Below are positions 4,653 to 15,539 of a stretch of 64,000 nucleotides of DNA, piece after piece. The translations under genes were made by a program, and so were the position numbers. The stretch is from Corallochytrium limacisporum Hawaii (lineage: Eukaryota; Protista; Pluriformea). The DNA lies in assembly GCA_002811645.1 (NCBI GenBank), contig PDIP01000110.1:10156-74155 (forward strand), in the 5' to 3' direction. Each line of letters starts with the position of its first letter. The first letter of the stretch is position 1. The notes beneath the pieces were generated by a model, which made no database searches, was not told the DNA's origin, and was given only the letters and a program-made list of their open reading frames with translations.

Positions 4653-5997
4653 TCACGCAGACTCACTGGCCTTAGCGTTAAGCTGGTCGAGAGTTAGCTT
4701 CGGGAGCAAGGACTTTGTCCCGGTTGCTGCGCCAACCGGCGGGTTGTTCTTCATGAAGCGAATGTATATGTCCGCTTCCTCGAGGGCCTCATCGTAGCCC
4801 TTGAAGCGTTTTGGCTTCTTGCGCATGTCGAAATCGTCCCATGGGGTAGTCTGTGAGGTGGCAACGGAATTGTGCTCGTAGGTGCCAAAGAATATGACAT
4901 CCACGGTACCCTTGTCCTCGCCGATCACCCGAGCTGGCCAAGCAGGGTAGCCTCGCACCTTGGCAAAGACGACTCGGTAGTACTGGCGACAAGCATTGCA
5001 GAGCCAGTCATCCTCAGGAATGTCAGCGAGGCCGATACAGTCAAGGTGGAAGCAAGACGGGCAGACGGAGCACTGAATCAGTTCGCCACCTTCGCCACAG
5101 ACGCGACATGTCTCTTCCACAACCTTCGCAGATTCCTTGTTACAGTCGTCACAGACAAATTTTTTGTCGTCCTGCGTGAGCTTGTGGCCCTTACATGACC
5201 GGTGATAGGCTTTGCTACATCTCGTGCATTTTTCGACGTGGCCGTCCTTCTGCTGGCAGTACTGGCACTTCGGCTTCACGACTAGGCGCAGGGACTGCTT
5301 GGGAGCCTTGGCGTCCGGCTTCAGGTACGTGTTCTCGAGAGTCCACAAGTGGATAAAGACAGCCGACAGAGTCTCCGCAGCCTCCAAAGTTGCCGACCAG
5401 TCCACACTGACGTCCTTCCAAATGTCCTGGAAGGCGGAGGGATCAACAGCATTGGCAAGAACCTGCAGGGAAGAACGAAATGCCGCCACCGTAGTGAACT
5501 GTTCCACCTGATTTTGCCATGCATCAAGAGAAGACCCGAACATAGACTCATTCAGCAAACGGCGCGATCGGTAGCGGTTGGCCAGATCATTGATGCCGAC
5601 GCTCAGTTTCTGGGCGGCATACCCATTCTGGGCCACAGCATCGTTGCCGTTCAGGTCATTTGCGACCTTGGTGACAAGCTTGCCAGGTCCGTCCTTCTTC
5701 TCAACTTCAGCCAACTCAATGCCATCACCAATGGACTCTCGGTAGAGCTGCAAGTTCCGTTTCAAAGCCTTCTCTCGCGAGCCCTCATCCATGAGCACGG
5801 CAATCAGAGCGTCGATGGCCTCCGTAGTGTTCAAGTGGCTCCAATCATGGTGTACACTACGTGCCTTCTTGTGAGCCTCAATGGCAGCTGACAGGTTGTC
5901 CTTACCCAGAGCAAAGAACTTGCCGCGGTCCTTTAGGTCCTCGTCTTCTTCTTCCTCTTCTTCCTCTTCTTCTTCCTCTTCTTCTTCCTCTTCTTCT

Positions 5998-6038
<41 letters not shown>

Positions 6039-9000
6039 TTCTTCCTCTTCTTCTTCCTCCTCCTCTTCGTCTTCTTCATCGTCCTCTTCCTCATCGTCGC
6101 CAGATCCCGCCGACTTTTCGCTTTTGGATTTGACGCTCTTCTGCTTCTCAGAGTCAACATCCATGGCAGTGTCAGTTACCACCTCATCCTCCTTCTTTAC
6201 TTCGGTGTTCTCAGGGGTCTTGGCCGTCGCAACGGGCACGGTCTCCTCTTCCTTCTTGGTAACGTCAGGCATTCCGGCAGACTCTTGGACAGGAGCCACA
6301 TTTTCCTTCTCGTCAGAAGGTTTATCGGTATCCATGGCATCCTCTGTCTTTTCAGGTTGACATGCAGCGTCCGCTTCGGCTTCGATTTCCTCTTGCTCGG
6401 GCTCTTGGGCCCGCTTCAGGTCATCTTCGAAGGCAGCCTTGTCCTCATCGTAGTGTTGGAGAGCAAGTTCGTAGACTTTGAGGGCATCTTCAGAGCTCTT
6501 CTGCACCACAACGCCCGGGACTGACTCAAAAGCATAGTACCTGTTGCAGTAGCGATCCATTCCCAGATAGGAACCAGCCGCCAAGGGAAGATCTTTGAAG
6601 GCCTGCTTGCCGAATTCCAGAATCTCATTTTCTAAGGAATTGATCATGGCCTGGTCCTGGGCAGCTTCACTCATTCCATCCATGAACGCATCGGAGGTGT
6701 TCAAGTCAGCAGTTTCAGGTTCGGGCTCCTTGCTGCTCTCGTTCTTTCCCTCCTTGGCCCTGCGAAGATCCGCAGCCACACGAATGTCGATGATGCGACC
6801 GTTGAGCTTGGCAATTTCCTTCAGACTGTCCTCCCATCGGTCCATGGCATCGGAGACATCCATAGAGAGCTCCTTGGAGTTCAGAAGTTCGTCAATGAGC
6901 ATCTGAACGATAGAGGTGCGTTCTTCAATGGACAGATCCCACACGTTGGCTTTGCTCAAGTTGCTCACCACAGTACCGTAGATTTCTCCCACGTCATAGG
7001 TTTCTTGAAGCAGAGCGGAGTAGAACTTCAGAATTTCACTCATAGTCATGTCATCAATTGGCAGCTGTGCCCACCACATGGTACCAGCATCCCTCACCAG
7101 CAGAGGCCTCATCAACAAATTCACAGTGTAAGCGAAGAGTGCGACGCTGAGCACGTTCTGGCCTTCCAGCATGGTCACAATTTCTGAAGGAATGAAATTC
7201 AGTGCGTTTTTGGGGATCTTCGGACCTCCCTTAATGCCGGTAGCGGAGTACATGGATTGCACATGGTCACCCAAGAGGGTAAAGAACTCTGAGAGTTGCA
7301 GTGCGTCTCCCACATTGGCATTTTCCAACGGGTTGAAAACATCGATAGCATCCATCTTCGGAAACTTCTTCACCTCGGCCGGAATGATCAACAAATCTTC
7401 CGTGCCACGGTCTGCACGCTCACGCTCTTTCTCTTCCTTCAGCTTCTGCTTGATGGCGCGTTGCTTCTCACGCTGCTTTTGCTTGGCAAGTTTCTCTTGT
7501 TCCTTCTTCTTCTGTTTCTCTTCCCGTGCCCTTGCTCTGGCTGCTGCAATCTTTTCCTTGCGTTCTTTGATAGCAGCCAGACGGGCCTGTCTGGCCTCCA
7601 ACTTCTTTTGCCTCTTCTCCTCCTTGGCTTTGCGCTTGGCTTCCAGGATTAGGCGCTTTCGCTCTAGGCGATTCTTCTGCGCCGCCATTTTTTCTTCCAT
7701 CTTCTTCTTCCGTTCCTCCTCACGGGCCATCATCTTGGCCAGCTTGACTGCCTCCGCCTCCTCGGCCTTTGCCTCCTTCTGGGCACGGATCTCTTCGAGG
7801 CGCTTCTTGAACATCTCCCGCTCCAGCTTCTCCTGTTCGGTCAGCTCGCGATCGGGCAGAGCTGGCAATTTAGCAGAAGCGCTCTTGGGTTTTGGACCAG
7901 GTTTAGCACGCTCTCCTTCCTTCTTCTCGCTCTTGGGCTTCGGAGTGGCTCTCGCAGCTCCCAGTGCCTCTTCTAGAGCATTGGCCTCTTCGACGACCTG
8001 ATGGTCAGTGAGGAAAGAACGGTCAAACCCGCCTTTGAATTCTTCAGGAAGACTTTCGTGTGGTTTCTTTTCCATTCTCTTATGACGTTCCAGCTTGTCC
8101 GCATCAGGCATGTGCTGCATGGTCCAAAGTACGTCCGGGTTGCTCAATCCGAACGCTTCCGGACCGCTGATGGCGGCCGACGACCGCGTACTGCGCTTCG
8201 CATTGCAGGCCTTAAGAATGGAAGACCACGGCGCCGTGGCCGACGTCGCCGTTTCAGTCGCCTCGGGAGCTGTCTCGCAGCTCACAGTGAAAATAGGCAG
8301 TCCTCCACCGTTGGGGTCCACTGAAATACGGCTAATGTATCGCGCTCGCTTGTTCTCTGGATCATTGTAGTCGAAGAACATGCGACTCGTGATGTAGCCA
8401 TCGGGGTAGATATACCGATCCGTGTGATGTAGATTTTTGTCTGTGACAACTCTTCCAAAAGAGTGATAGGTGATGCCTTTGCTCTTGAAAGGGAATTTGA
8501 TATTTCCGTTCTCGTCCATAGGGATCCTAGGTCCCGACGAGGCGGTCCGCCTTGTGCGGGTGGTTGCCGGTGACTTTTTCTTCGAGTCCGTCTCACCGCC
8601 CGCTGCTTCTGCTGCTATTTTGGCAACTTCTGGTGCCTTGGCAGAAGCAGAAGTCGCCACAGAAGCGCGCCGGCTTCCATCGTCATCGTCAAACAAGTCG
8701 GCGACAGCCTCTTGTTTAGCACTGGCGACTTTCTTTGATTCTGCCTTCGCCTTGATGGCCCCCAGCATGTCATCGTCGCTGTCATCAAAGGCATCCTTCA
8801 CTGTCTTGGAAGCAGAAGCAGCGACAGGAGCAGATGAAGTCGCGGTTACCGCAGCAGGTGGTGGAGCTGCCACGGGAGCTGTTGCAGGTTGGCTGGGAGC
8901 GCTCTGCTTCCGTTTCTTCGGCCTTGGCCACTCATCGTCACTATCACTTAAAAAACCAGCGTTCTGTGTCTGTTGTGGTGTTGTTTCAACGGAAGTCTGT

Positions 9001-9272
9001 AAACTTGTGGCTGCAACAGGCGCCTGTTGCGGTGCATATCCATGTTGCTGCTGTTGTTGTTGGTAGTACGGATCATGCTGAGGCGGTGGTGCCTGTCCTG
9101 GAGGGGGTGGTTGCTGCCCGTACATGTTAGGATCATAATACTGTCCCGGCGGCGGTGGTGGCGGCAAGGGATTCCCGTACGCGTCGTATCCATATGGTGC
9201 GTTGGGATCGTACCCGTAACCATATTGCCCTTGGTGGTAGGCGTCACCCGGTGGTGGTCCGTGGTAACTCAT
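4653..9272 (-). CDS. BAZ/ACF1-like ISWI-accessory chromatin protein (QPGY-rich N-term, FYRN-FYRC, coiled coil, DDT, WHIM/WSD, poly-Glu, 2x PHD, PWWP)
   Basis: 1539-aa intronless ORF. FYR motifs 'SFGRVV..HTDRYIYPDGY' and 'ISGPEAFGLSNPDV'; DDT 'VGDALQLSEFFTLLG'; WSD 'LGMDRYCNRYY' and 'EGSREKALKRNL'; PHD 'CRVCGEGGELIQCSVCPSCFHLDC..DWLCNAC'; PWWP 'VFAKVRGYPAWPARV..VIFFGT'. Confidence 0.88.
5941..6095 (-). repeat. Coding (GAA/GAG)n repeat encoding a ~50-residue Glu/Asp tract
   Basis: tcttcc/tcttcttcc tandem units within the 4653-9272 ORF. Confidence 0.95.
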
Positions 9273-10588
9273 GATCTAGAACTGTTTAAAATGGGATCTA
9301 TACAATAGTTCTTTTGGTCGACATTATATAACTATTTTAACTACTTTGTATAACTGATGTAGTACCCGAACTGGTAGTAAACACTAAAGTTCTTCAGCGT
9401 CGTTCAATATTTTTAAAGTTTTCATACTTTTGAACCATGAATACCACTCACATCATTTCATCCGGTAACTTTGATCCGGATTTCCAGATCTGTATCACTC
9501 TCTATATTGGTGTTGCCTGCCGTTCCTTCTGGCCCGGTGCCAAGAACGTTCCAGATCCTGCCCGTGGTCTCACACGGAGCAAAGCTTTCTCCAACACTGC
9601 TTACATCCCAAAAAAAAAAAAGCCGCCCAAAAAAATTATTGGAATCCGCGAAGCCTGCGGGAACTTGGCTATGGCAGGAACCCCCCTCCCTTCCTTCACC
9701 ACCTCCATCCCTCCCCCGTGGGGCGCATATGACCTCTGCCAGCCCGACAACTTTTTTGCTTGGTTTGTGCTTGATCCATACATTCAGTACTGATCTACCG
9801 AATTGGAATTCATTTTCTCACTATCGACCGGAGAGTAGGAGTAGGCCGCTGCGATGTTCAATTGATTCCAGGAAATGGTAGGTTTCTGCCGTCTGGCAGG
9901 CATTTTGTGCGCGAATGTGCGCCCCGGAGAAGCGAAGGATGGAAGAAGAGTGCTCCAGGTGGTGCCATGGATGAGGCAAGCAAAGAAGTTGTATAAGCCG
10001 TGGTTGATGCGCCATCACAAGAACACCGTAGAGGATGCTTGCAGTGGATGTCTGCAATGCTTGGAATTCAATGGCCGTGGCCGATATGTCACATGGGTCT
10101 GGCACGGGCACGAAAACAAAGATAGAGTTTAGCGCGCACACCACCGTGACCCATTCCAGCGAGGGAAGGCTCGAAAGTCCGAAAGCTGCGGTCAGCCGAG
10201 AATTCAGCAGAAAAAGCACACAAAGCAACAACAACCCTTCATTTCTGGTCCCCGACGTGAATCCCATACATTCACTATACATTGACAAGAAAATTTCAGA
10301 AGAGGAGCCAACAAGAATTTTGGTCCTTGTTGGCAGGGGTCAGCGCCCCCTCAGCAGAGGACACAAACTGGGCTGGGCTCCACACTTCCGGGGAGGGGAA
10401 AGTAGCGCGAAAAGAATTGGAGAGAGTCAAATGGGCACCCCACCTAGCCTGTGAAAATCAATAATCTGTAAATATACAAATACTGCAGGACTAGAAATAC
10501 TGAATCAATCAAAAGCAGCAGATTATCTGAATATATTCAGAAGATTTAATGATAGCTATTGTACGCATGAAGGTGAACTGAAGGGCAG

Positions 10589-11275
10589 TCAAGCATTCCC
10601 CAGTGCCTGTCGAAGCTGACGACGTCGCTTATTCCGCCGTGAGACAATCTCTGCAGGCAGCTTACGTTCTTTGATGGTCGTGGAGATATCGGCTCCGGTA
10701 TCTTTTGAACCCTTGGTGCTCTGATTCAGTGCCTCCGAGTACTTCCAGAAGTAGCCCACCGTGGGCGTGAACCGGGAAGCCGCGGCTGTGTCCTTCATTG
10801 CGCTACGCAGAAAGTGAAGGCTGTTCAGCAAGCGACTTTTTACGATAATGTCTAGCGTTGGCGCCAAGAATATGGACCCATCAACACAGTAGTAATACGC
10901 CAACGTTGAGATCTTCTCTGGGCTGGACCGAAAGCGTTTCTCAATAACAAACACCACGGGTGGAACCTTACTGGGTTCCGTTCCCGGTTTGGGCGGTGGC
11001 GACATGTATACTAGCTCATATTCTGTTCCCTTGTATTGTCTTCTAGCCTGAGGATCCTGCATTGCCTGTGCTGCTAATTCATTGGTACATTGCCGGTCGT
11101 AGAACGGACTCAGCGAAAAGTATTCCAGAATATTATGAGGATGCAGGCCTCCACGGGCCTGAATAAACCCTTTGTCATAGAAGTTAAACCGCAAATGAGA
11201 GTTAACACCTTGGTACTGGTTCTTTTGTTCCTCAATAGCCTTTTCCTTTTCGGCTTGAAGTGTGTCGTCAGCCAT
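10589..11275 (-). CDS. MED6: Mediator complex subunit 6
   Basis: 'NILEYFSLSPFYDRQCTNE', 'GTEYEL', 'FVIEKRFR', 'LAYYYCVDGSIFLAPTL..IVKSRL' match the Med6 family pattern. Confidence 0.95.
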   Translation of the reverse strand: MADDTLQAEKEKAIEEQKNQYQGVNSHLRFNFYDKGFIQARGGLHPHNILEYFSLSPFYDRQCTNELAAQAMQDPQARRQYKGTEYELVYMSPPPKPGTEPSKVPPVVFVIEKRFRSSPEKISTLAYYYCVDGSIFLAPTLDIIVKSRLLNSLHFLRSAMKDTAAASRFTPTVGYFWKYSEALNQSTKGSKDTGADISTTIKERKLPAEIVSRRNKRRRQLRQALGNA

Positions 11276-11779
11276 TGTTATTAGCTTTCTAATTTTGCCT
11301 GTGTTTTGTACTGATCATTCACATGGTTCTCAATAATCTCGTCATAAATCCACAAATATTCACTTTAAATTGTCTCGAACGTTACTAAAAAATGAAAACT
11401 ACAAAACTCTCATGGGTCCAAAGAAAATTACACCCCCAAAATACCCCATGCGAGCAACATGAGTACGCCAAACAAGTAATTTTCCTTTCCATTGGCCCAG
11501 CACAGTGCGAAGGCACCAGCGCTTCTCTTTCCCCGCTTCTACCGGTGTGTTGTTCTCAGGGACAACGTTTGGGAAGCCCGAGCCAGGTTAGCACTGGGCG
11601 GGAGTTGGGGGGGGGGGAAGGTGTCCGGATGTGAAACTGGGGGCCGAATTTAGGTGTACGCGGTATATTCACCAGAGACCGGGCGGAGGAGTACGTAACT
11701 ATATACTTAATTCTTTCAAATACTTTCTCTCCAGGATTATCTAACACTGTGTAGTCAACGAGTTGTCAGTCATAATATA

Positions 11780-12852
11780 CCGACCTTTCATAAATTTGGG
11801 GGTCGGCATTCGTGTCAGGAGGAGTCACTGGTCGCCTTGGGGGATGGCGGCGGGTCTCCACAGCCCGAGACTGATGATACGGTTGCTTCGCGCATCATCA
11901 CGTACTTTGCGAAGACACGAACAGACAGTCTGTGGCGGCGAAAGTACACACCAGATACTTTAATTGAAGAATTTGTTGATCGCGAGGACCATATGATTGA
12001 GCGCCGGACAGCACTTAGCGCACCGTTCCATACAAGTTTAGACCCCAAGAAGGAGATTGACCCCTATGTCATTGTGGAGACATATAAGGTGCAAGAAGGC
12101 AGACCACCACAAGAGTGCATGCACCGCATCAAGTATCTTGTTGCTGAGCGGCTGGTCTCTGTCGACATGCATGTTGCAGCGGACCGGCTGCTCCCAGAAA
12201 GCCGGCAATACAGCGTGAAAGAGCAGCTCTTCCGTAAATGTCAACAGTTCGGATCCAAGTCCAACGGAGGTTAAGGTCTTTGAGCGCCTGAACGAAAAAG
12301 ACTGGCTTGTTGAGCACGAGGCCAACATTACCAGCCAAGTCCGCCAGGCCTACGTGGAGCTCACCGAATGGCTCGGCCATCGCTGGGCGGCCGCTACTAA
12401 AGCTGAGCTGGACCGTCTCATCTACGAGATTGCTCGCGACCGAGACGTCATTGAACGGCGCCGTGAGGCCGAGCGCCGTGCACAAACAGAGAACGACCGG
12501 GCCAATCCCAGCGACTAACTCACTCCATTCCTGCTCCGTGTTGATGACCCCGAACTGCTGACTCCCAGGTTGCGGCCAAAGTCCGTGACGACTGCCTTCA
12601 GGATCTCAAGGAGCGGCTGATCAAGCGCGCACAGCGCATTCAGAATCGGTTTGAAGAGGAATCTGCTGATATTCAACAGCGCCGACAGTGGCACCAGGAG
12701 CGCCAGGCGACTTTCACCGCCTCCGAGGAGCCGGAGTATGTCACCTGCTGCAGGTCCACCGTCTCGAACATCACAAGCAACGCGCTACCGAAACATATCG
12801 AAAGATGGGCAAGCATTTGCAGACTGATCCGCGTCTGGCACATCTGTTGTAA
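11780..12852 (+). pseudogene. DRC7: Dynein regulatory complex subunit 7 (DRC7/CCDC135) pseudogene, C-terminal third only
   Basis: Pieces in three frames reconstruct the DRC7 C-terminus: RIITYFAKTRTDSLWRRKYTPDTLIEEFVDREDH; LIYEIARDRDVIERRREAERR..D*LTPFL; DDCLQDLKERLIKRAQRIQNRFEEE..QQRRQWHQE; RLEHHKQRA..LQTDPRL*. Frameshifts at ~12219-12271, ~12564 and ~12752; TAA at 12516-12518. Confidence 0.88.
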
Positions 12853-13061
12853 AATATTACAGACACTTCTTCCAAGCAAAGCGAGTGGTTCATGGAAAAT
12901 TCATACATTTCTTTAATTGGGCTATTTTTTAACTTACAATGACTGACTGATAACATACAACATCCCTTCTAAATACATATCTAGTTTCTTCCCAACATGA
13001 AAGTCAGCACGAACATGAGTAAGATAACGAAGACAAAGGGATTGCTGACACTGTCCTGCAG

Positions 13062-13184
13062 TCAACTGCGAGGGCAGTCGCAGCGCAGATTCTGGGGCAC
13101 ACTGGCTAAAGCCTGTTCAACGTGGCCACCGCATCCGGCCCAGGTAGGCTTTTGGCACTTTCCGCACTTGGTCTGGTAGCACAT
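13062..13184 (-). CDS. Conserved 40-aa Cys/His-rich microprotein (putative metal binder)
   Basis: ATG at 13184 gives MCYQTKCGKCQKPTWAGCGGHVEQALASVPQNLRCDCPRS; the C-x4-C-x2-C..TWxGCGxH..RCxC pattern resembles an uncharacterised small family I recall from fungi and actinobacteria; AT-rich 3' flank. Confidence 0.82.
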   Translation of the reverse strand: MCYQTKCGKCQKPTWAGCGGHVEQALASVPQNLRCDCPRS

Positions 13185-14288
13185 AGTTGGTAAATGGTGG
13201 TCCTGTGTTAGTACAACCGTATTAATATGGAGGAGTCTGAAGATCTTTTGTACACCTATTGTAAAGTGGACCAAGGAGTGGCCCATTAAATACCTTGAAA
13301 GCTCTGGGCGCGAAAGGACATCATACCATCTTCCACGCCGTGCTCACGTATTCCAGATACACGTATCAGCAATACACTTACTTGTCCCATTCAGTATCTG
13401 CTGTTCGCTGAGACGCATCGGTCGGCCTCTATCCGAAGAGACAAGGGTGCCGTATCGACCACCGACCCCAGCGCACGGTGGCTGAGGCGCCCTGCCAGGG
13501 GCAGGAGGCGTGTGTACGAAGGGACGAAAGTTTTCCGTCGTCCGTTCCCACTGTCTTTCTATGCAAGTCACCTCCCCCGGGGTTCGTTGCCCTTGCCATC
13601 CCCCCCCCGGGGGGTCTCCCCCTCTCGCACGCTCTGTCAGAGTTTGAAGGGTGCTCCTTGGCTTTTCTCACTTGGTCCCTCCCCCCGAACCGGGGAACCT
13701 TTGTGGCGCAAGCCCGGGCTTTATTCGTCTCCAAGTTAGCTGCCCAACGCTTTATCTCCGTACTAAAACAATTGACAAATTTTCCCCTTTGTTCGTGAGC
13801 AAACCACCGTGTGTCAGCAGAGCGCAGTCGGTGTTTTTTTGTGTTGCGCTTGGGCCCGACCCCCCCCCCGGGGGGTCGAGGGGGAAATGACCGAGCTCGG
13901 GGTTCATGGGCGGGCCAGGCTTTACGCTGAGCACCTAAGGCCCCGAAGAGCAAGGCTCCCCCCCCCGTTTTGCCCTCCGGCTTAGACCCGCCATTGGGGG
14001 CCTAAATTATTCGTAGCTCTAAAAATATATCCGGACCTTTTGTTTCTCCAGGTTCAACTGGCTTGAAATCTATCGCGCGATGGTAATGGGCCATTGATGG
14101 CCGGTCAATGTGTCAAAGGTCATTCCTTAGGTATGGATACCAAAATTCATAAGGTTAGGTGTATTGTTACTTTGTTTGGTGGCATTCTTTCCCGATTCGC
14201 TGCAAAGTGTATGCATGTTGTGAACATGTCAGCGGGTATGCCAAAAAGATGGAAAGTTATGCTGCGCTATCTAAGTTTCGTTTCCCAC

Positions 14289-15539
14289 CTACACGACAGC
14301 GGCGGTTTTCAGGCGTGCTTGTCCCTTGGGTTCGTTGAATGGCTTGTTGATCTGCGACATCATCCAGTCCTCCTCATCCGCGGCCTTGTGCCTTGTTCCT
14401 TGTTGATAAGAAGGTAGGACTTCCCCGGCGTCCTTTGCAGTGCGTTTCAGATAGACATAGGCATCGGTGCCGTAGCCTTCCATACTAATGAGCTGCAAAT
14501 CCCCGCCAAAGTAACGCGCATACAGACGACTAAGAGGGAGACCGTAACCGAAACCGGCCAGAGGGGCATGATTCATATCGGTGGCAGCGCCTTCTTCGAG
14601 AGCCGGGGTGGAAGCAGTGGTATACAGATAGGTGAACAGCTGCTGGATGCTCTTACGCGGAATACCACCGCCTTCATCGCTAAGCTTCACAGTGAGGTCC
14701 CGTTCTCCCTCGACAATGATGCACTTGACCGGAGGATAATCGACGGCATCCGGGCCGTAGAACTCAATGGTTGCCCGCAACGAATTCTTCATGATCTCAA
14801 AAAGGATGTGGTACAGATGCGACGGCACGTAGGGGAAAGTCACGCGGTCCTCCCGGTTCGGGGTAATGACCTGTACATTGGGGGATGCAAAGTAGTACTG
14901 CTCGCAAAGGAACTTGGCTGCCTGCGCTGCGTCCTGTGCGATCGAGTTCACGTCACAGTTGAGGTCAATCACGCCCAATCCAGGGGTCTTCTTCACGCCA
15001 AATAGTTCCACATGCTGAGCAATGAGCATACGGATACCAATACGGCTCATGTAGAATCGGTCCAGGAAGGTGTGAATGCTGGCATCCAGGGCATCCTCGC
15101 CTGCGTTGTTCCGCAGTTCCATGATGCCTTGTGCCATGGTGGTCACAACCGGAGCGTGGCGCGTACGGATAGTTTCGAGCAGGTCAGTGAATCCGTGCAC
15201 ATACTCTTCACCCTTGCGCTCAATCTCTTCTGCTGGGGGCCACTTCAACAGCTCCTCAAATGACTGAATATACCATGACCTCACCTTCTCGACGGAAGGC
15301 ATGCGCAGCAACTGTCCCGGAAGCGCATCGAATTCTTTGACCATATGGGCCAGACGAACAGGGATTTCATTGCGGAGGAACATGCAGCTCCGAATGGGGG
15401 CGTCGTGATTTTTGTTCGCAGCAAATTCTGCGAACTGGTGAATGCTGACCGGAGTCTGTTTGTACCTGGCGTACTGTGCCAAAGATTCGCTGACGTTCGG
15501 TGTAGCGCACCGGCGAAGGACGAAAGTAAAGCGAACCAT
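14289..15539 (-). CDS. PDK: Mitochondrial pyruvate dehydrogenase kinase
   Basis: 'FLRNEIPVRLAH', 'FLDRFYMSRIGIRMLIAQH', 'HILFEIMKNSLRAT', 'SDEGGGIP', 'PLAGFGYGLPLSRLYARYFGGDL'. Confidence 0.97.
   Translation of the reverse strand: MVRFTFVLRRCATPNVSESLAQYARYKQTPVSIHQFAEFAANKNHDAPIRSCMFLRNEIPVRLAHMVKEFDALPGQLLRMPSVEKVRSWYIQSFEELLKWPPAEEIERKGEEYVHGFTDLLETIRTRHAPVVTTMAQGIMELRNNAGEDALDASIHTFLDRFYMSRIGIRMLIAQHVELFGVKKTPGLGVIDLNCDVNSIAQDAAQAAKFLCEQYYFASPNVQVITPNREDRVTFPYVPSHLYHILFEIMKNSLRATIEFYGPDAVDYPPVKCIIVEGERDLTVKLSDEGGGIPRKSIQQLFTYLYTTASTPALEEGAATDMNHAPLAGFGYGLPLSRLYARYFGGDLQLISMEGYGTDAYVYLKRTAKDAGEVLPSYQQGTRHKAADEEDWMMSQINKPFNEPKGQARLKTAAVV

What the first reader, a model, noticed from the sequence alone, without database searches (positions are those of the whole stretch)
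11780..12852. Fossil flagellar gene: multiply broken DRC7/CCDC135 pseudogene
Seen: four segments in three frames that together read as the C-terminal ~350 aa of DRC7. The conserved DYLxPFL motif is D*LTPFL (TAA 12516 at the Tyr). There is a 1-nt deletion at ~12564, a frameshift in 12219-12271, a deletion of roughly ten codons at ~12752, and the N-terminal transglutaminase-like region is absent. Established: DRC7 is a nexin-dynein regulatory complex subunit of motile axonemes. Inference: every identified neighbouring gene except the EF-hand locus is intact, so this is specific relaxed selection, i.e. recent loss of motile-flagellum function. If the organism is Corallochytrium-like (no observed flagellum, flagellar toolkit debated), this argues against a cryptic motile flagellated stage.
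Basis: partly seen in the sequence, partly recalled or inferred. Interest (0 to 1): 0.85.

Follow-up and report, generated by a model that had tools for sequence, protein, structure and literature searches.

The report
Dead flagellum gene in Corallochytrium
A single-celled relative of animals that was thought to hide an unseen swimming stage carries only a recently broken remnant of a gene needed for a beating flagellum, one of many such remnants, so it has most likely lost the flagellum rather than hidden it.

Summary
Confirmed. Window 11880-12852 is the only DRC7 sequence in the genome of Corallochytrium limacisporum (identified by a published peptide and genome size). It holds the last ~320 codons, broken by a frameshifting gap, a TAA at the conserved Tyr, a 1-nt and a 28-nt deletion; the first ~530 codons are absent genome-wide. 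The breaks stand in the DNA reads, and three stand unrepaired in an RNA contig from another study. A second strain seems broken differently (weak evidence). DRC7 alone proves little, but my genome survey found no axonemal or IFT dynein heavy chain except a ~115-codon DNAH2 remnant, and broken DRC2, probable DRC1, IFT57, IFT46, kinesin-2 and two B9 genes, whereas SAS-6, delta/epsilon-like tubulins, PACRG and GAS8/DRC4 are intact. Reading: recent loss of the whole flagellum with the centriole kit kept. This contradicts the published 'cryptic flagellated stage'; I found no paper reporting these pseudogenes. The kind of event is known (Emiliania huxleyi). The scan had already noted this stretch and sister relics elsewhere in this genome. 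Intact GAS8 is unexplained.

The parts
10589..11275 (-). Intact MED6 gene, head-to-head neighbour; probably shares its promoter with the relic (inferred)
   Evidence: Pfam Med6 E 3e-31; RNA-type contigs 10528-11303 and 10583-11206
11691..11734 (+). 44-nt intron-like element (GTACGT ... pyrimidine tract CAG), likely a leader intron of the former DRC7 transcript; splicing not shown
   Evidence: similar GTACGT..CAG elements elsewhere in the window; no RNA contig covers it
11735..11879 (+). No significant DRC7 homology; the junction of the large 5' deletion (~530 codons) must lie at or upstream of 11879
11880..12214 (+). Piece 1: second half of the MORN_DRC7 region (human 524-638); its frame runs on to TAA 12272-12274
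12215..12227 (+). Break 1: frameshift with a gap of roughly 15 codons against homologues
   Evidence: profile positions 643 to 663 over 13 nt
12228..12515 (+). Piece 2: helical region before the DYLAPFL motif
   Evidence: profile 663-751, E 8e-9
12516..12518 (+). Break 2: in-frame TAA at the conserved Tyr
   Evidence: same letters in DNA unitig and RNA-type contig
12519..12566 (+). Piece 2b: rest of the motif (LTPFL) and linker
   Evidence: profile 759-775
12564..12568 (+). Break 3: one base missing, frameshift
12569..12751 (+). Piece 3: DRC7_C first two thirds (human 769-828, 45-50% identity to the best homologues)
12752..12753 (+). Break 4: ten codons missing, 28-nt frameshifting deletion; the second strain's contig stops matching exactly at 12752
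12754..12852 (+). Piece 4: C-terminal 32 codons and the native stop
   Evidence: DRC7_C 79-109
12237..12889 (.). Stretch covered, letter for letter, by a contig of RNA-type run X3: residual unrepaired transcript (strand not shown)
   Evidence: table 8
11919..12579 (+). 661 nt skipped in one low-depth contig of RNA-type run X4 (other strain); ends GA..AA, no microhomology: possible strain-specific deletion
   Evidence: table 5

Best explanation
A unitary pseudogene of DRC7 in Corallochytrium limacisporum, left by a recent, complete loss of the flagellum. Shown: the gene is single-copy, lacks ~60% of its length, has four frame-breaking lesions, is transcribed unrepaired, and other motile-axoneme, IFT and transition-zone genes are broken or not found while centriole genes are intact. 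Inferred: once no flagellum was built, selection on cilium-only genes ended; they decay mainly by deletion in a compact genome; the relic is still weakly transcribed because it sits head-to-head with MED6; genes with centriolar or other cytoplasmic jobs stay intact. Inferred age: about 0.03 neutral substitutions per site (0.2 or more is unlikely), a few times the difference between the two cultured strains.
For: Identity and breaks. Single locus, N-terminus absent genome-wide. Breaks in reads and in RNA-type contig. Species. One dynein heavy chain only, plus a ~115-codon DNAH2 remnant. Broken DRC2, probable DRC1, IFT57, IFT46, OSM-3/KIF17-type kinesin-2, two B9-domain genes. Not found: RSP3, RSP4/6, CCDC39, IFT52, IFT81 CH, canonical CFAP20 (64, 85, 40, 69, 94, 72). 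Intact: SAS-6, five tubulins, PACRG, GAS8 (46, 29, 59, 68, 31, 43). Codon-position GC and codon usage of the relic equal intact genes; only one nonsense codon in ~317.
Against: GAS8/DRC4 is full length and very conserved (E 3e-165 to human DRC4), PACRG is intact, and long IFT140-like and IFT172-like ORFs are open. 'Not found' results have no positive control in this tool. X1 may be the source of the assembly; only X3 is independent and it does not cover break 1. The relic is more diverged (29% identity) than intact homologues are from each other (33-45%), so decay or relaxation may be older than the stop count suggests. No close intact relative was available for dN/dS.
Confidence: 0.9

Rival explanations
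1. Loss is limited to the sequenced strain or arose in culture; wild populations keep an intact flagellar toolkit and a cryptic swimming stage (as some Emiliania huxleyi strains do).
For: Low nonsense load points to a young event; the hints of different lesions in X4 show the locus is still changing; precedent PMC4438323.
Against: The second, independently isolated strain also seems broken (661-nt skip); erosion is deep, e.g. DNAH2 reduced from ~4400 to ~115 codons and most dynein heavy chains undetectable; strains are reported as almost identical.
Confidence: 0.07
2. Only motility was lost; a short non-motile cilium or cilium-derived structure persists, built with GAS8, PACRG and a reduced IFT-A/IFT172 set.
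For: Intact GAS8, PACRG, IFT140-like and IFT172-like ORFs; at the relic's break density these would rarely stay open by chance.
Against: Kinesin-2 is a relic and none of eleven intact kinesins read has its neck; no dynein-2 heavy chain; IFT57, IFT46 and both B9 genes broken, IFT52 and IFT81 not found.
Confidence: 0.06
3. The gene is functional and is repaired at the RNA level (micro-introns, editing or stop recoding), perhaps only in a rare stage.
For: GT..AG stretches of the right phase exist near break 1 (13, 55, 61, 70 nt) and at the IFT57 break; several relic stops are TAG, two at conserved Trp of the B9D2-like gene.
Against: X3 contig is unspliced and unedited over 12237-12889; two breaks are deletions against homologues and 530 codons are absent from the genome, which splicing or base editing cannot supply; TAG ends 11 of 46 long ORFs; the B9D2-like gene also has a frameshift.
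Confidence: 0.01
4. Assembly or sequencing artefact, or a decayed duplicate of an intact gene elsewhere.
For: Short-read assembly with gaps; X1 may be its source.
Against: One unitig at flank-like depth (161 vs 166) with no other letters; an RNA-type run of a different study has the same letters; profile searches find one locus only.
Confidence: 0.01

Closest known systems
DRC7/CCDC135 (N-DRC subunit; Pfam MORN_DRC7 PF24667, DRC7_C PF24671; PDB 8J07 chain 7)
   Same: Collinear homology over human residues ~524 to the C-terminus; needed for N-DRC and flagellum assembly in mouse sperm (PMC6994161).
   Different: No N-terminal transglutaminase-like region, four frame breaks; longest in-frame product from an ATG would be a 93-aa MORN fragment.
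Flagellar pseudogene 'fossils' of Emiliania huxleyi CCMP1516/EH2 (von Dassow et al., PMC4438323)
   Same: Recent flagellum loss read from dynein heavy-chain pseudogenes cut down by large deletions.
   Different: There the loss is polymorphic among strains of a haptophyte and tied to loss of the haploid phase; here it is in a holozoan for which a cryptic flagellate was inferred from the same kind of genes, and the centriole kit and GAS8 remain.
'Cryptic flagellated stage' hypothesis for C. limacisporum (Torruella et al. 2015, as cited in PMC7147346 and PMC12731214)
   Same: Same genes seen: flagellar-toolkit homologues are present and some are transcribed.
   Different: Read at codon level many of these homologues are pseudogenes, and a transcript here carries the lesions, so presence and expression do not imply a flagellum.

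Membership tests
DRC7/CCDC135 | DRC7_C domain at the C-terminus | tested here: met
   PF24671 70 bits (cut-off 28) plus the tail in the next frame; best PDB hit human DRC7
DRC7/CCDC135 | MORN_DRC7 region upstream of DRC7_C | tested here: met
   PF24667 positions 90-213 of 283, 49.5 bits; first 90 positions missing
DRC7/CCDC135 | N-terminal transglutaminase-like region | tested here: not met
   Full-length profile matches only positions 529-844 anywhere in the genome
DRC7/CCDC135 | One open frame of ~850-950 aa | tested here: not met
   Four breaks in ~320 codons
Unitary pseudogene | Disabling lesions real in the genome | tested here: met
   DNA unitig identical over the relic
Unitary pseudogene | No intact paralogue in the genome | tested here: met
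   (assembly has gaps, so not absolute)
Unitary pseudogene | No repair in RNA | tested here: met
   X3 contig keeps breaks 2-4; break 1 not covered; cultured stage only
Unitary pseudogene | Neutral evolution (dN/dS near 1) on the terminal branch | not testable with these tools
   No close intact relative found
Unitary pseudogene | At the ancestral syntenic position | not tested
   No related eukaryote genome available to the tools
Organism able to build a motile axoneme | Intact axonemal dynein heavy chains | tested here: not met
   Only one intact heavy chain (4907 aa, cytoplasmic type inferred) and a DNAH2 remnant
Organism able to build a motile axoneme | Intact IFT-B core and kinesin-2 | tested here: not met
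   IFT57, IFT46 and kinesin-2 broken; IFT52 and IFT81 not found

The most novel reading that the evidence does not exclude
C. limacisporum is a natural experiment caught just after total flagellum loss: cilium-only genes are still readable as fossils of different depth, lesions still differ between strains, and the genes that stayed intact (GAS8/DRC4, PACRG, divergent IFT140- and IFT172-like proteins, with SAS-6 and delta/epsilon tubulins) mark axonemal proteins that have an essential job outside a cilium, for example at the centriole.
Probability: 0.45. Interest if true: 0.85.

Novelty: new member of a known kind. Interest (0 to 1): 0.72.

Why it matters
Papers up to December 2025 repeat that C. 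limacisporum has most of the flagellar toolkit and probably a cryptic flagellated stage. The fossils turn that into a recent independent flagellum loss in Holozoa, show that gene presence and even RNA evidence can mislead such inferences, and give a transfectable species in which the intact-versus-dead split of ciliary genes predicts which ones have non-ciliary roles.

Tried and rejected
Micro-intron repair: GT..AG candidates listed, contradicted by the unspliced X3 contig and by deletions against homologues. TAG recoding or editing: TAG is an ordinary terminator here, and the relics also have frameshifts. Homology upstream of 11880: none. Attempts to find the second strain's letters or a wild relative failed: protein search with piece 3, metagenome scans with piece 3 and MED6, exact look-ups of MED6 and PDK, MED6 homologue search. 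NYD-SP28 N-terminal Pfam search gave nothing; the C-terminal family found the DRC1/DRC2 relics. An 18S search failed technically. Torruella et al. 2015 and the journal version of Kozyczkowska et al. 2021 are not held, so the former is cited second-hand.

Full report
OBSERVATION. The + strand of 11880-12852 encodes the C-terminal part of DRC7 in pieces. Pfam gives MORN_DRC7 for the frame 11780-12271 (E 7e-13) and DRC7_C positions 6-74 (E 2e-19) and 79-109 (E 2e-5) for two later frames. The best solved-structure matches are human DRC7 residues 524-638 and 769-828. A profile built from 21 homologues matches pieces at positions 531-643, 663-751, 759-775, 773-843 and 848-878 in order. Reading through with X at each break gives four lesions: a frameshift at 12215-12227 with a gap of roughly 15 codons; TAA 12516-12518 at the Tyr of the DYLAPFL motif; one base missing at 12564-12568; and ten codons missing at 12752, which by codon count is a 28-nt frameshifting deletion. 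The native stop is 12850-12852. Only about 600 nt separate it from the start of the head-to-head MED6 gene, no room for the missing ~530 codons.

ARE THE LESIONS REAL? One unitig of DNA run X1 spans 11474-13450 at depth 161 (flank 166) with no other letters; its only gap is a G-run at 11606 outside the gene. X1 may be the source of the assembly. RNA-type run X3, from another study, has a contig over 12237-12889 with no differences, so breaks 2, 3 and 4 are present unspliced and unedited; its contigs fall on MED6 and the relic's 3' part and not between, as transcripts would, though strand and RNA status are not proven. Run X4 differs from the reference at 2 of 624 letters in MED6 and 4 of 185 near 13000, so it is another strain. 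Its single relic contig (depth 3.3) joins 11918 to 12580, skipping 661 nt with non-splice ends and no microhomology, and stops matching at 12752, exactly the deletion junction I inferred independently, leaving five letters unplaced. This hints that the second strain has a private deletion and lacks break 4; it rests on one weak contig whose last letters I could not see. Searches of the whole genome with DRC7_C and with a full-length alignment find this locus only, positions 529-844 of 879.

ORGANISM. The genome is 24.11 Mb in 286 contigs; the published C. limacisporum assembly is 24.1 Mb and almost intron-free (PMC5560861). The N-terminal peptide of C. limacisporum Src printed in bioRxiv 10.1101/2020.11.12.379420 is encoded exactly once in this genome. 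The same paper describes two almost identical strains, Hawaii and India, which fits X3 and X4 (inference).

THE REST OF THE FLAGELLAR KIT. One broken gene does not show organelle loss, so I surveyed the genome. Dynein heavy chains: three Pfam domains find one intact 4907-aa chain (taken as cytoplasmic dynein 1), a weakly matching 4871-aa AAA protein that reads like midasin (from memory), and a remnant of ~115 codons whose best match is DNAH2, the 4427-aa inner-arm I1 beta chain, beside a DMC1/RAD51-like gene. N-DRC: DRC2/CCDC65 lies in several frames and a probable DRC1 likewise. IFT: IFT57 is split by a frameshift and stop, IFT46 is a C-terminal fragment, IFT52 and IFT81 were not found, and the kinesin-2 is an OSM-3/KIF17-type relic with frameshifts and a large internal deletion; none of eleven intact kinesins I read has a kinesin-2 neck. 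Transition zone: both B9-domain genes found carry in-frame TAG stops, one also a frameshift. RSP3, RSP4/6, CCDC39 and canonical CFAP20 were not found; these blanks lack a positive control. Intact: alpha, beta, gamma and two further tubulins that I read as epsilon and delta (names inferred from motifs and 28-35% identity to the others), SAS-6, PACRG, GAS8/DRC4 at full length, E 3e-165 to the human protein, and long but weakly scoring IFT140-like (1240 aa) and IFT172-like (1847 aa) ORFs. At 2 breaks per kb, half the DRC7 density, GAS8 would stay open with probability 0.05 and the IFT172-like ORF 1e-5, so at least the latter are under selection.

HOW OLD? The relic keeps coding-like GC by codon position (0.66/0.40/0.60 against 0.36-0.46 between genes) and codon usage like intact genes (0.82 against 0.78-0.84; other frames 0.72-0.78). 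One nonsense codon in ~317 is what simulation gives at about 0.03 substitutions per site; 0.2 or more leaves at most one stop in under 3% of runs. The strains differ by 0.3-2%. Against this, identity to homologues (29%) is below that among intact homologues (33-45%), so a long branch or earlier relaxation contributes. Deletions, not point mutations, did most of the damage.

MECHANISM. Shown: a dead, single-copy, still transcribed DRC7 among many dead ciliary genes. Established: DRC7 is an N-DRC subunit needed for flagellum assembly in mouse sperm (PMC6994161). Inferred: the lineage stopped building a flagellum; cilium-only genes were released from selection and are eroding at rates set by deletion; residual transcription comes from the promoter region shared with MED6, where a 44-nt intron-like element survives (11691-11734); centriole genes stay, in line with the open mitosis and centriole-type gene profile discussed for this species in bioRxiv 10.1101/2023.05.10.540163. 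Why GAS8 is intact while DRC1, DRC2 and DRC7 are dead is unexplained; a non-ciliary role is my preferred reading.

RIVALS. RNA-level repair fails because deletions and a 530-codon absence cannot be spliced or edited back, the RNA contig is unrepaired, and TAG is a normal terminator (11 of 46 long ORFs). Artefact or duplicate fails. A non-motile cilium is unlikely without kinesin-2, dynein-2, IFT-B core and B9 proteins. A strain-limited loss cannot be excluded without the second genome, but the depth of erosion and the X4 hint speak against it.

KNOWN CONTEXT AND NOVELTY. Flagellar pseudogene fossils marking recent flagellum loss are known from Emiliania huxleyi (PMC4438323), so this is a new member of a known kind. 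[quoted passage not shown] Searches for a paper reporting these pseudogenes found none; Torruella et al. 2015 itself is not held, so I cite it second-hand. Earlier notes of this scan flagged the same stretch and several sister relics; I checked DRC2, kinesin-2, the dynein remnant and GAS8 myself and treat the others as untested leads.

VERDICT. Real, correctly identified, and part of a genome-wide pattern that answers a standing question for this species. Interest 0.72.

Noticed in passing
L012:811-2274 (G000:C233): GAS8/DRC4 is intact and highly conserved over its full length although DRC1, DRC2 and DRC7 are broken.
   Followed up: partly
L039:4168-7890 and L040:3669-9212: IFT140-like (1240 aa) and IFT172-like (1847 aa) ORFs are open but score weakly in Pfam and lack clear N-terminal propeller hits: possibly repurposed IFT proteins.
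   Followed up: partly
L050:6671-7261 (G000:C261): About 115 codons of inner-arm dynein DNAH2 survive between a long ORF and a DMC1/RAD51-like gene.
   Followed up: yes
L055 (G000:C70:23246-23563): B9D2-like relic has TAG at two positions that I recall as conserved Trp, plus a later frameshift; several relic stops are TAG, possibly a G-to-A mutation bias.
   Followed up: partly
L020 (G000:C143:189353-189398): At the IFT57 break a 13-nt GT..AG stretch has the phase to restore the frame; probably chance, not tested against RNA.
   Followed up: no
window 13062-13184 (-): 40-aa Cys/His-rich ORF without Pfam match; an abundant X4 contig covers 12922-13106.
   Followed up: partly
window 13860-14290 (+): G-run plus pyrimidine-rich CAG at 14051, like the region upstream of the DRC7 relic, but no recognisable gene follows on the + strand: perhaps another lost gene.
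   Followed up: no
window 9785-10454: Open frames of 140-172 codons on both strands between the chromatin gene and MED6, no Pfam match.
   Followed up: partly
window 4653-9272 (-): 1539-aa chromatin protein with FYRN/FYRC, WHIM1/WSD, two PHD fingers and PWWP.
   Followed up: partly
window 10792-10942 and 11125-11275: Marine metagenome run X5 holds MED6 fragments with the same two variant letters as strain X4, so Corallochytrium of that type occurs in the wild sample.
   Followed up: no
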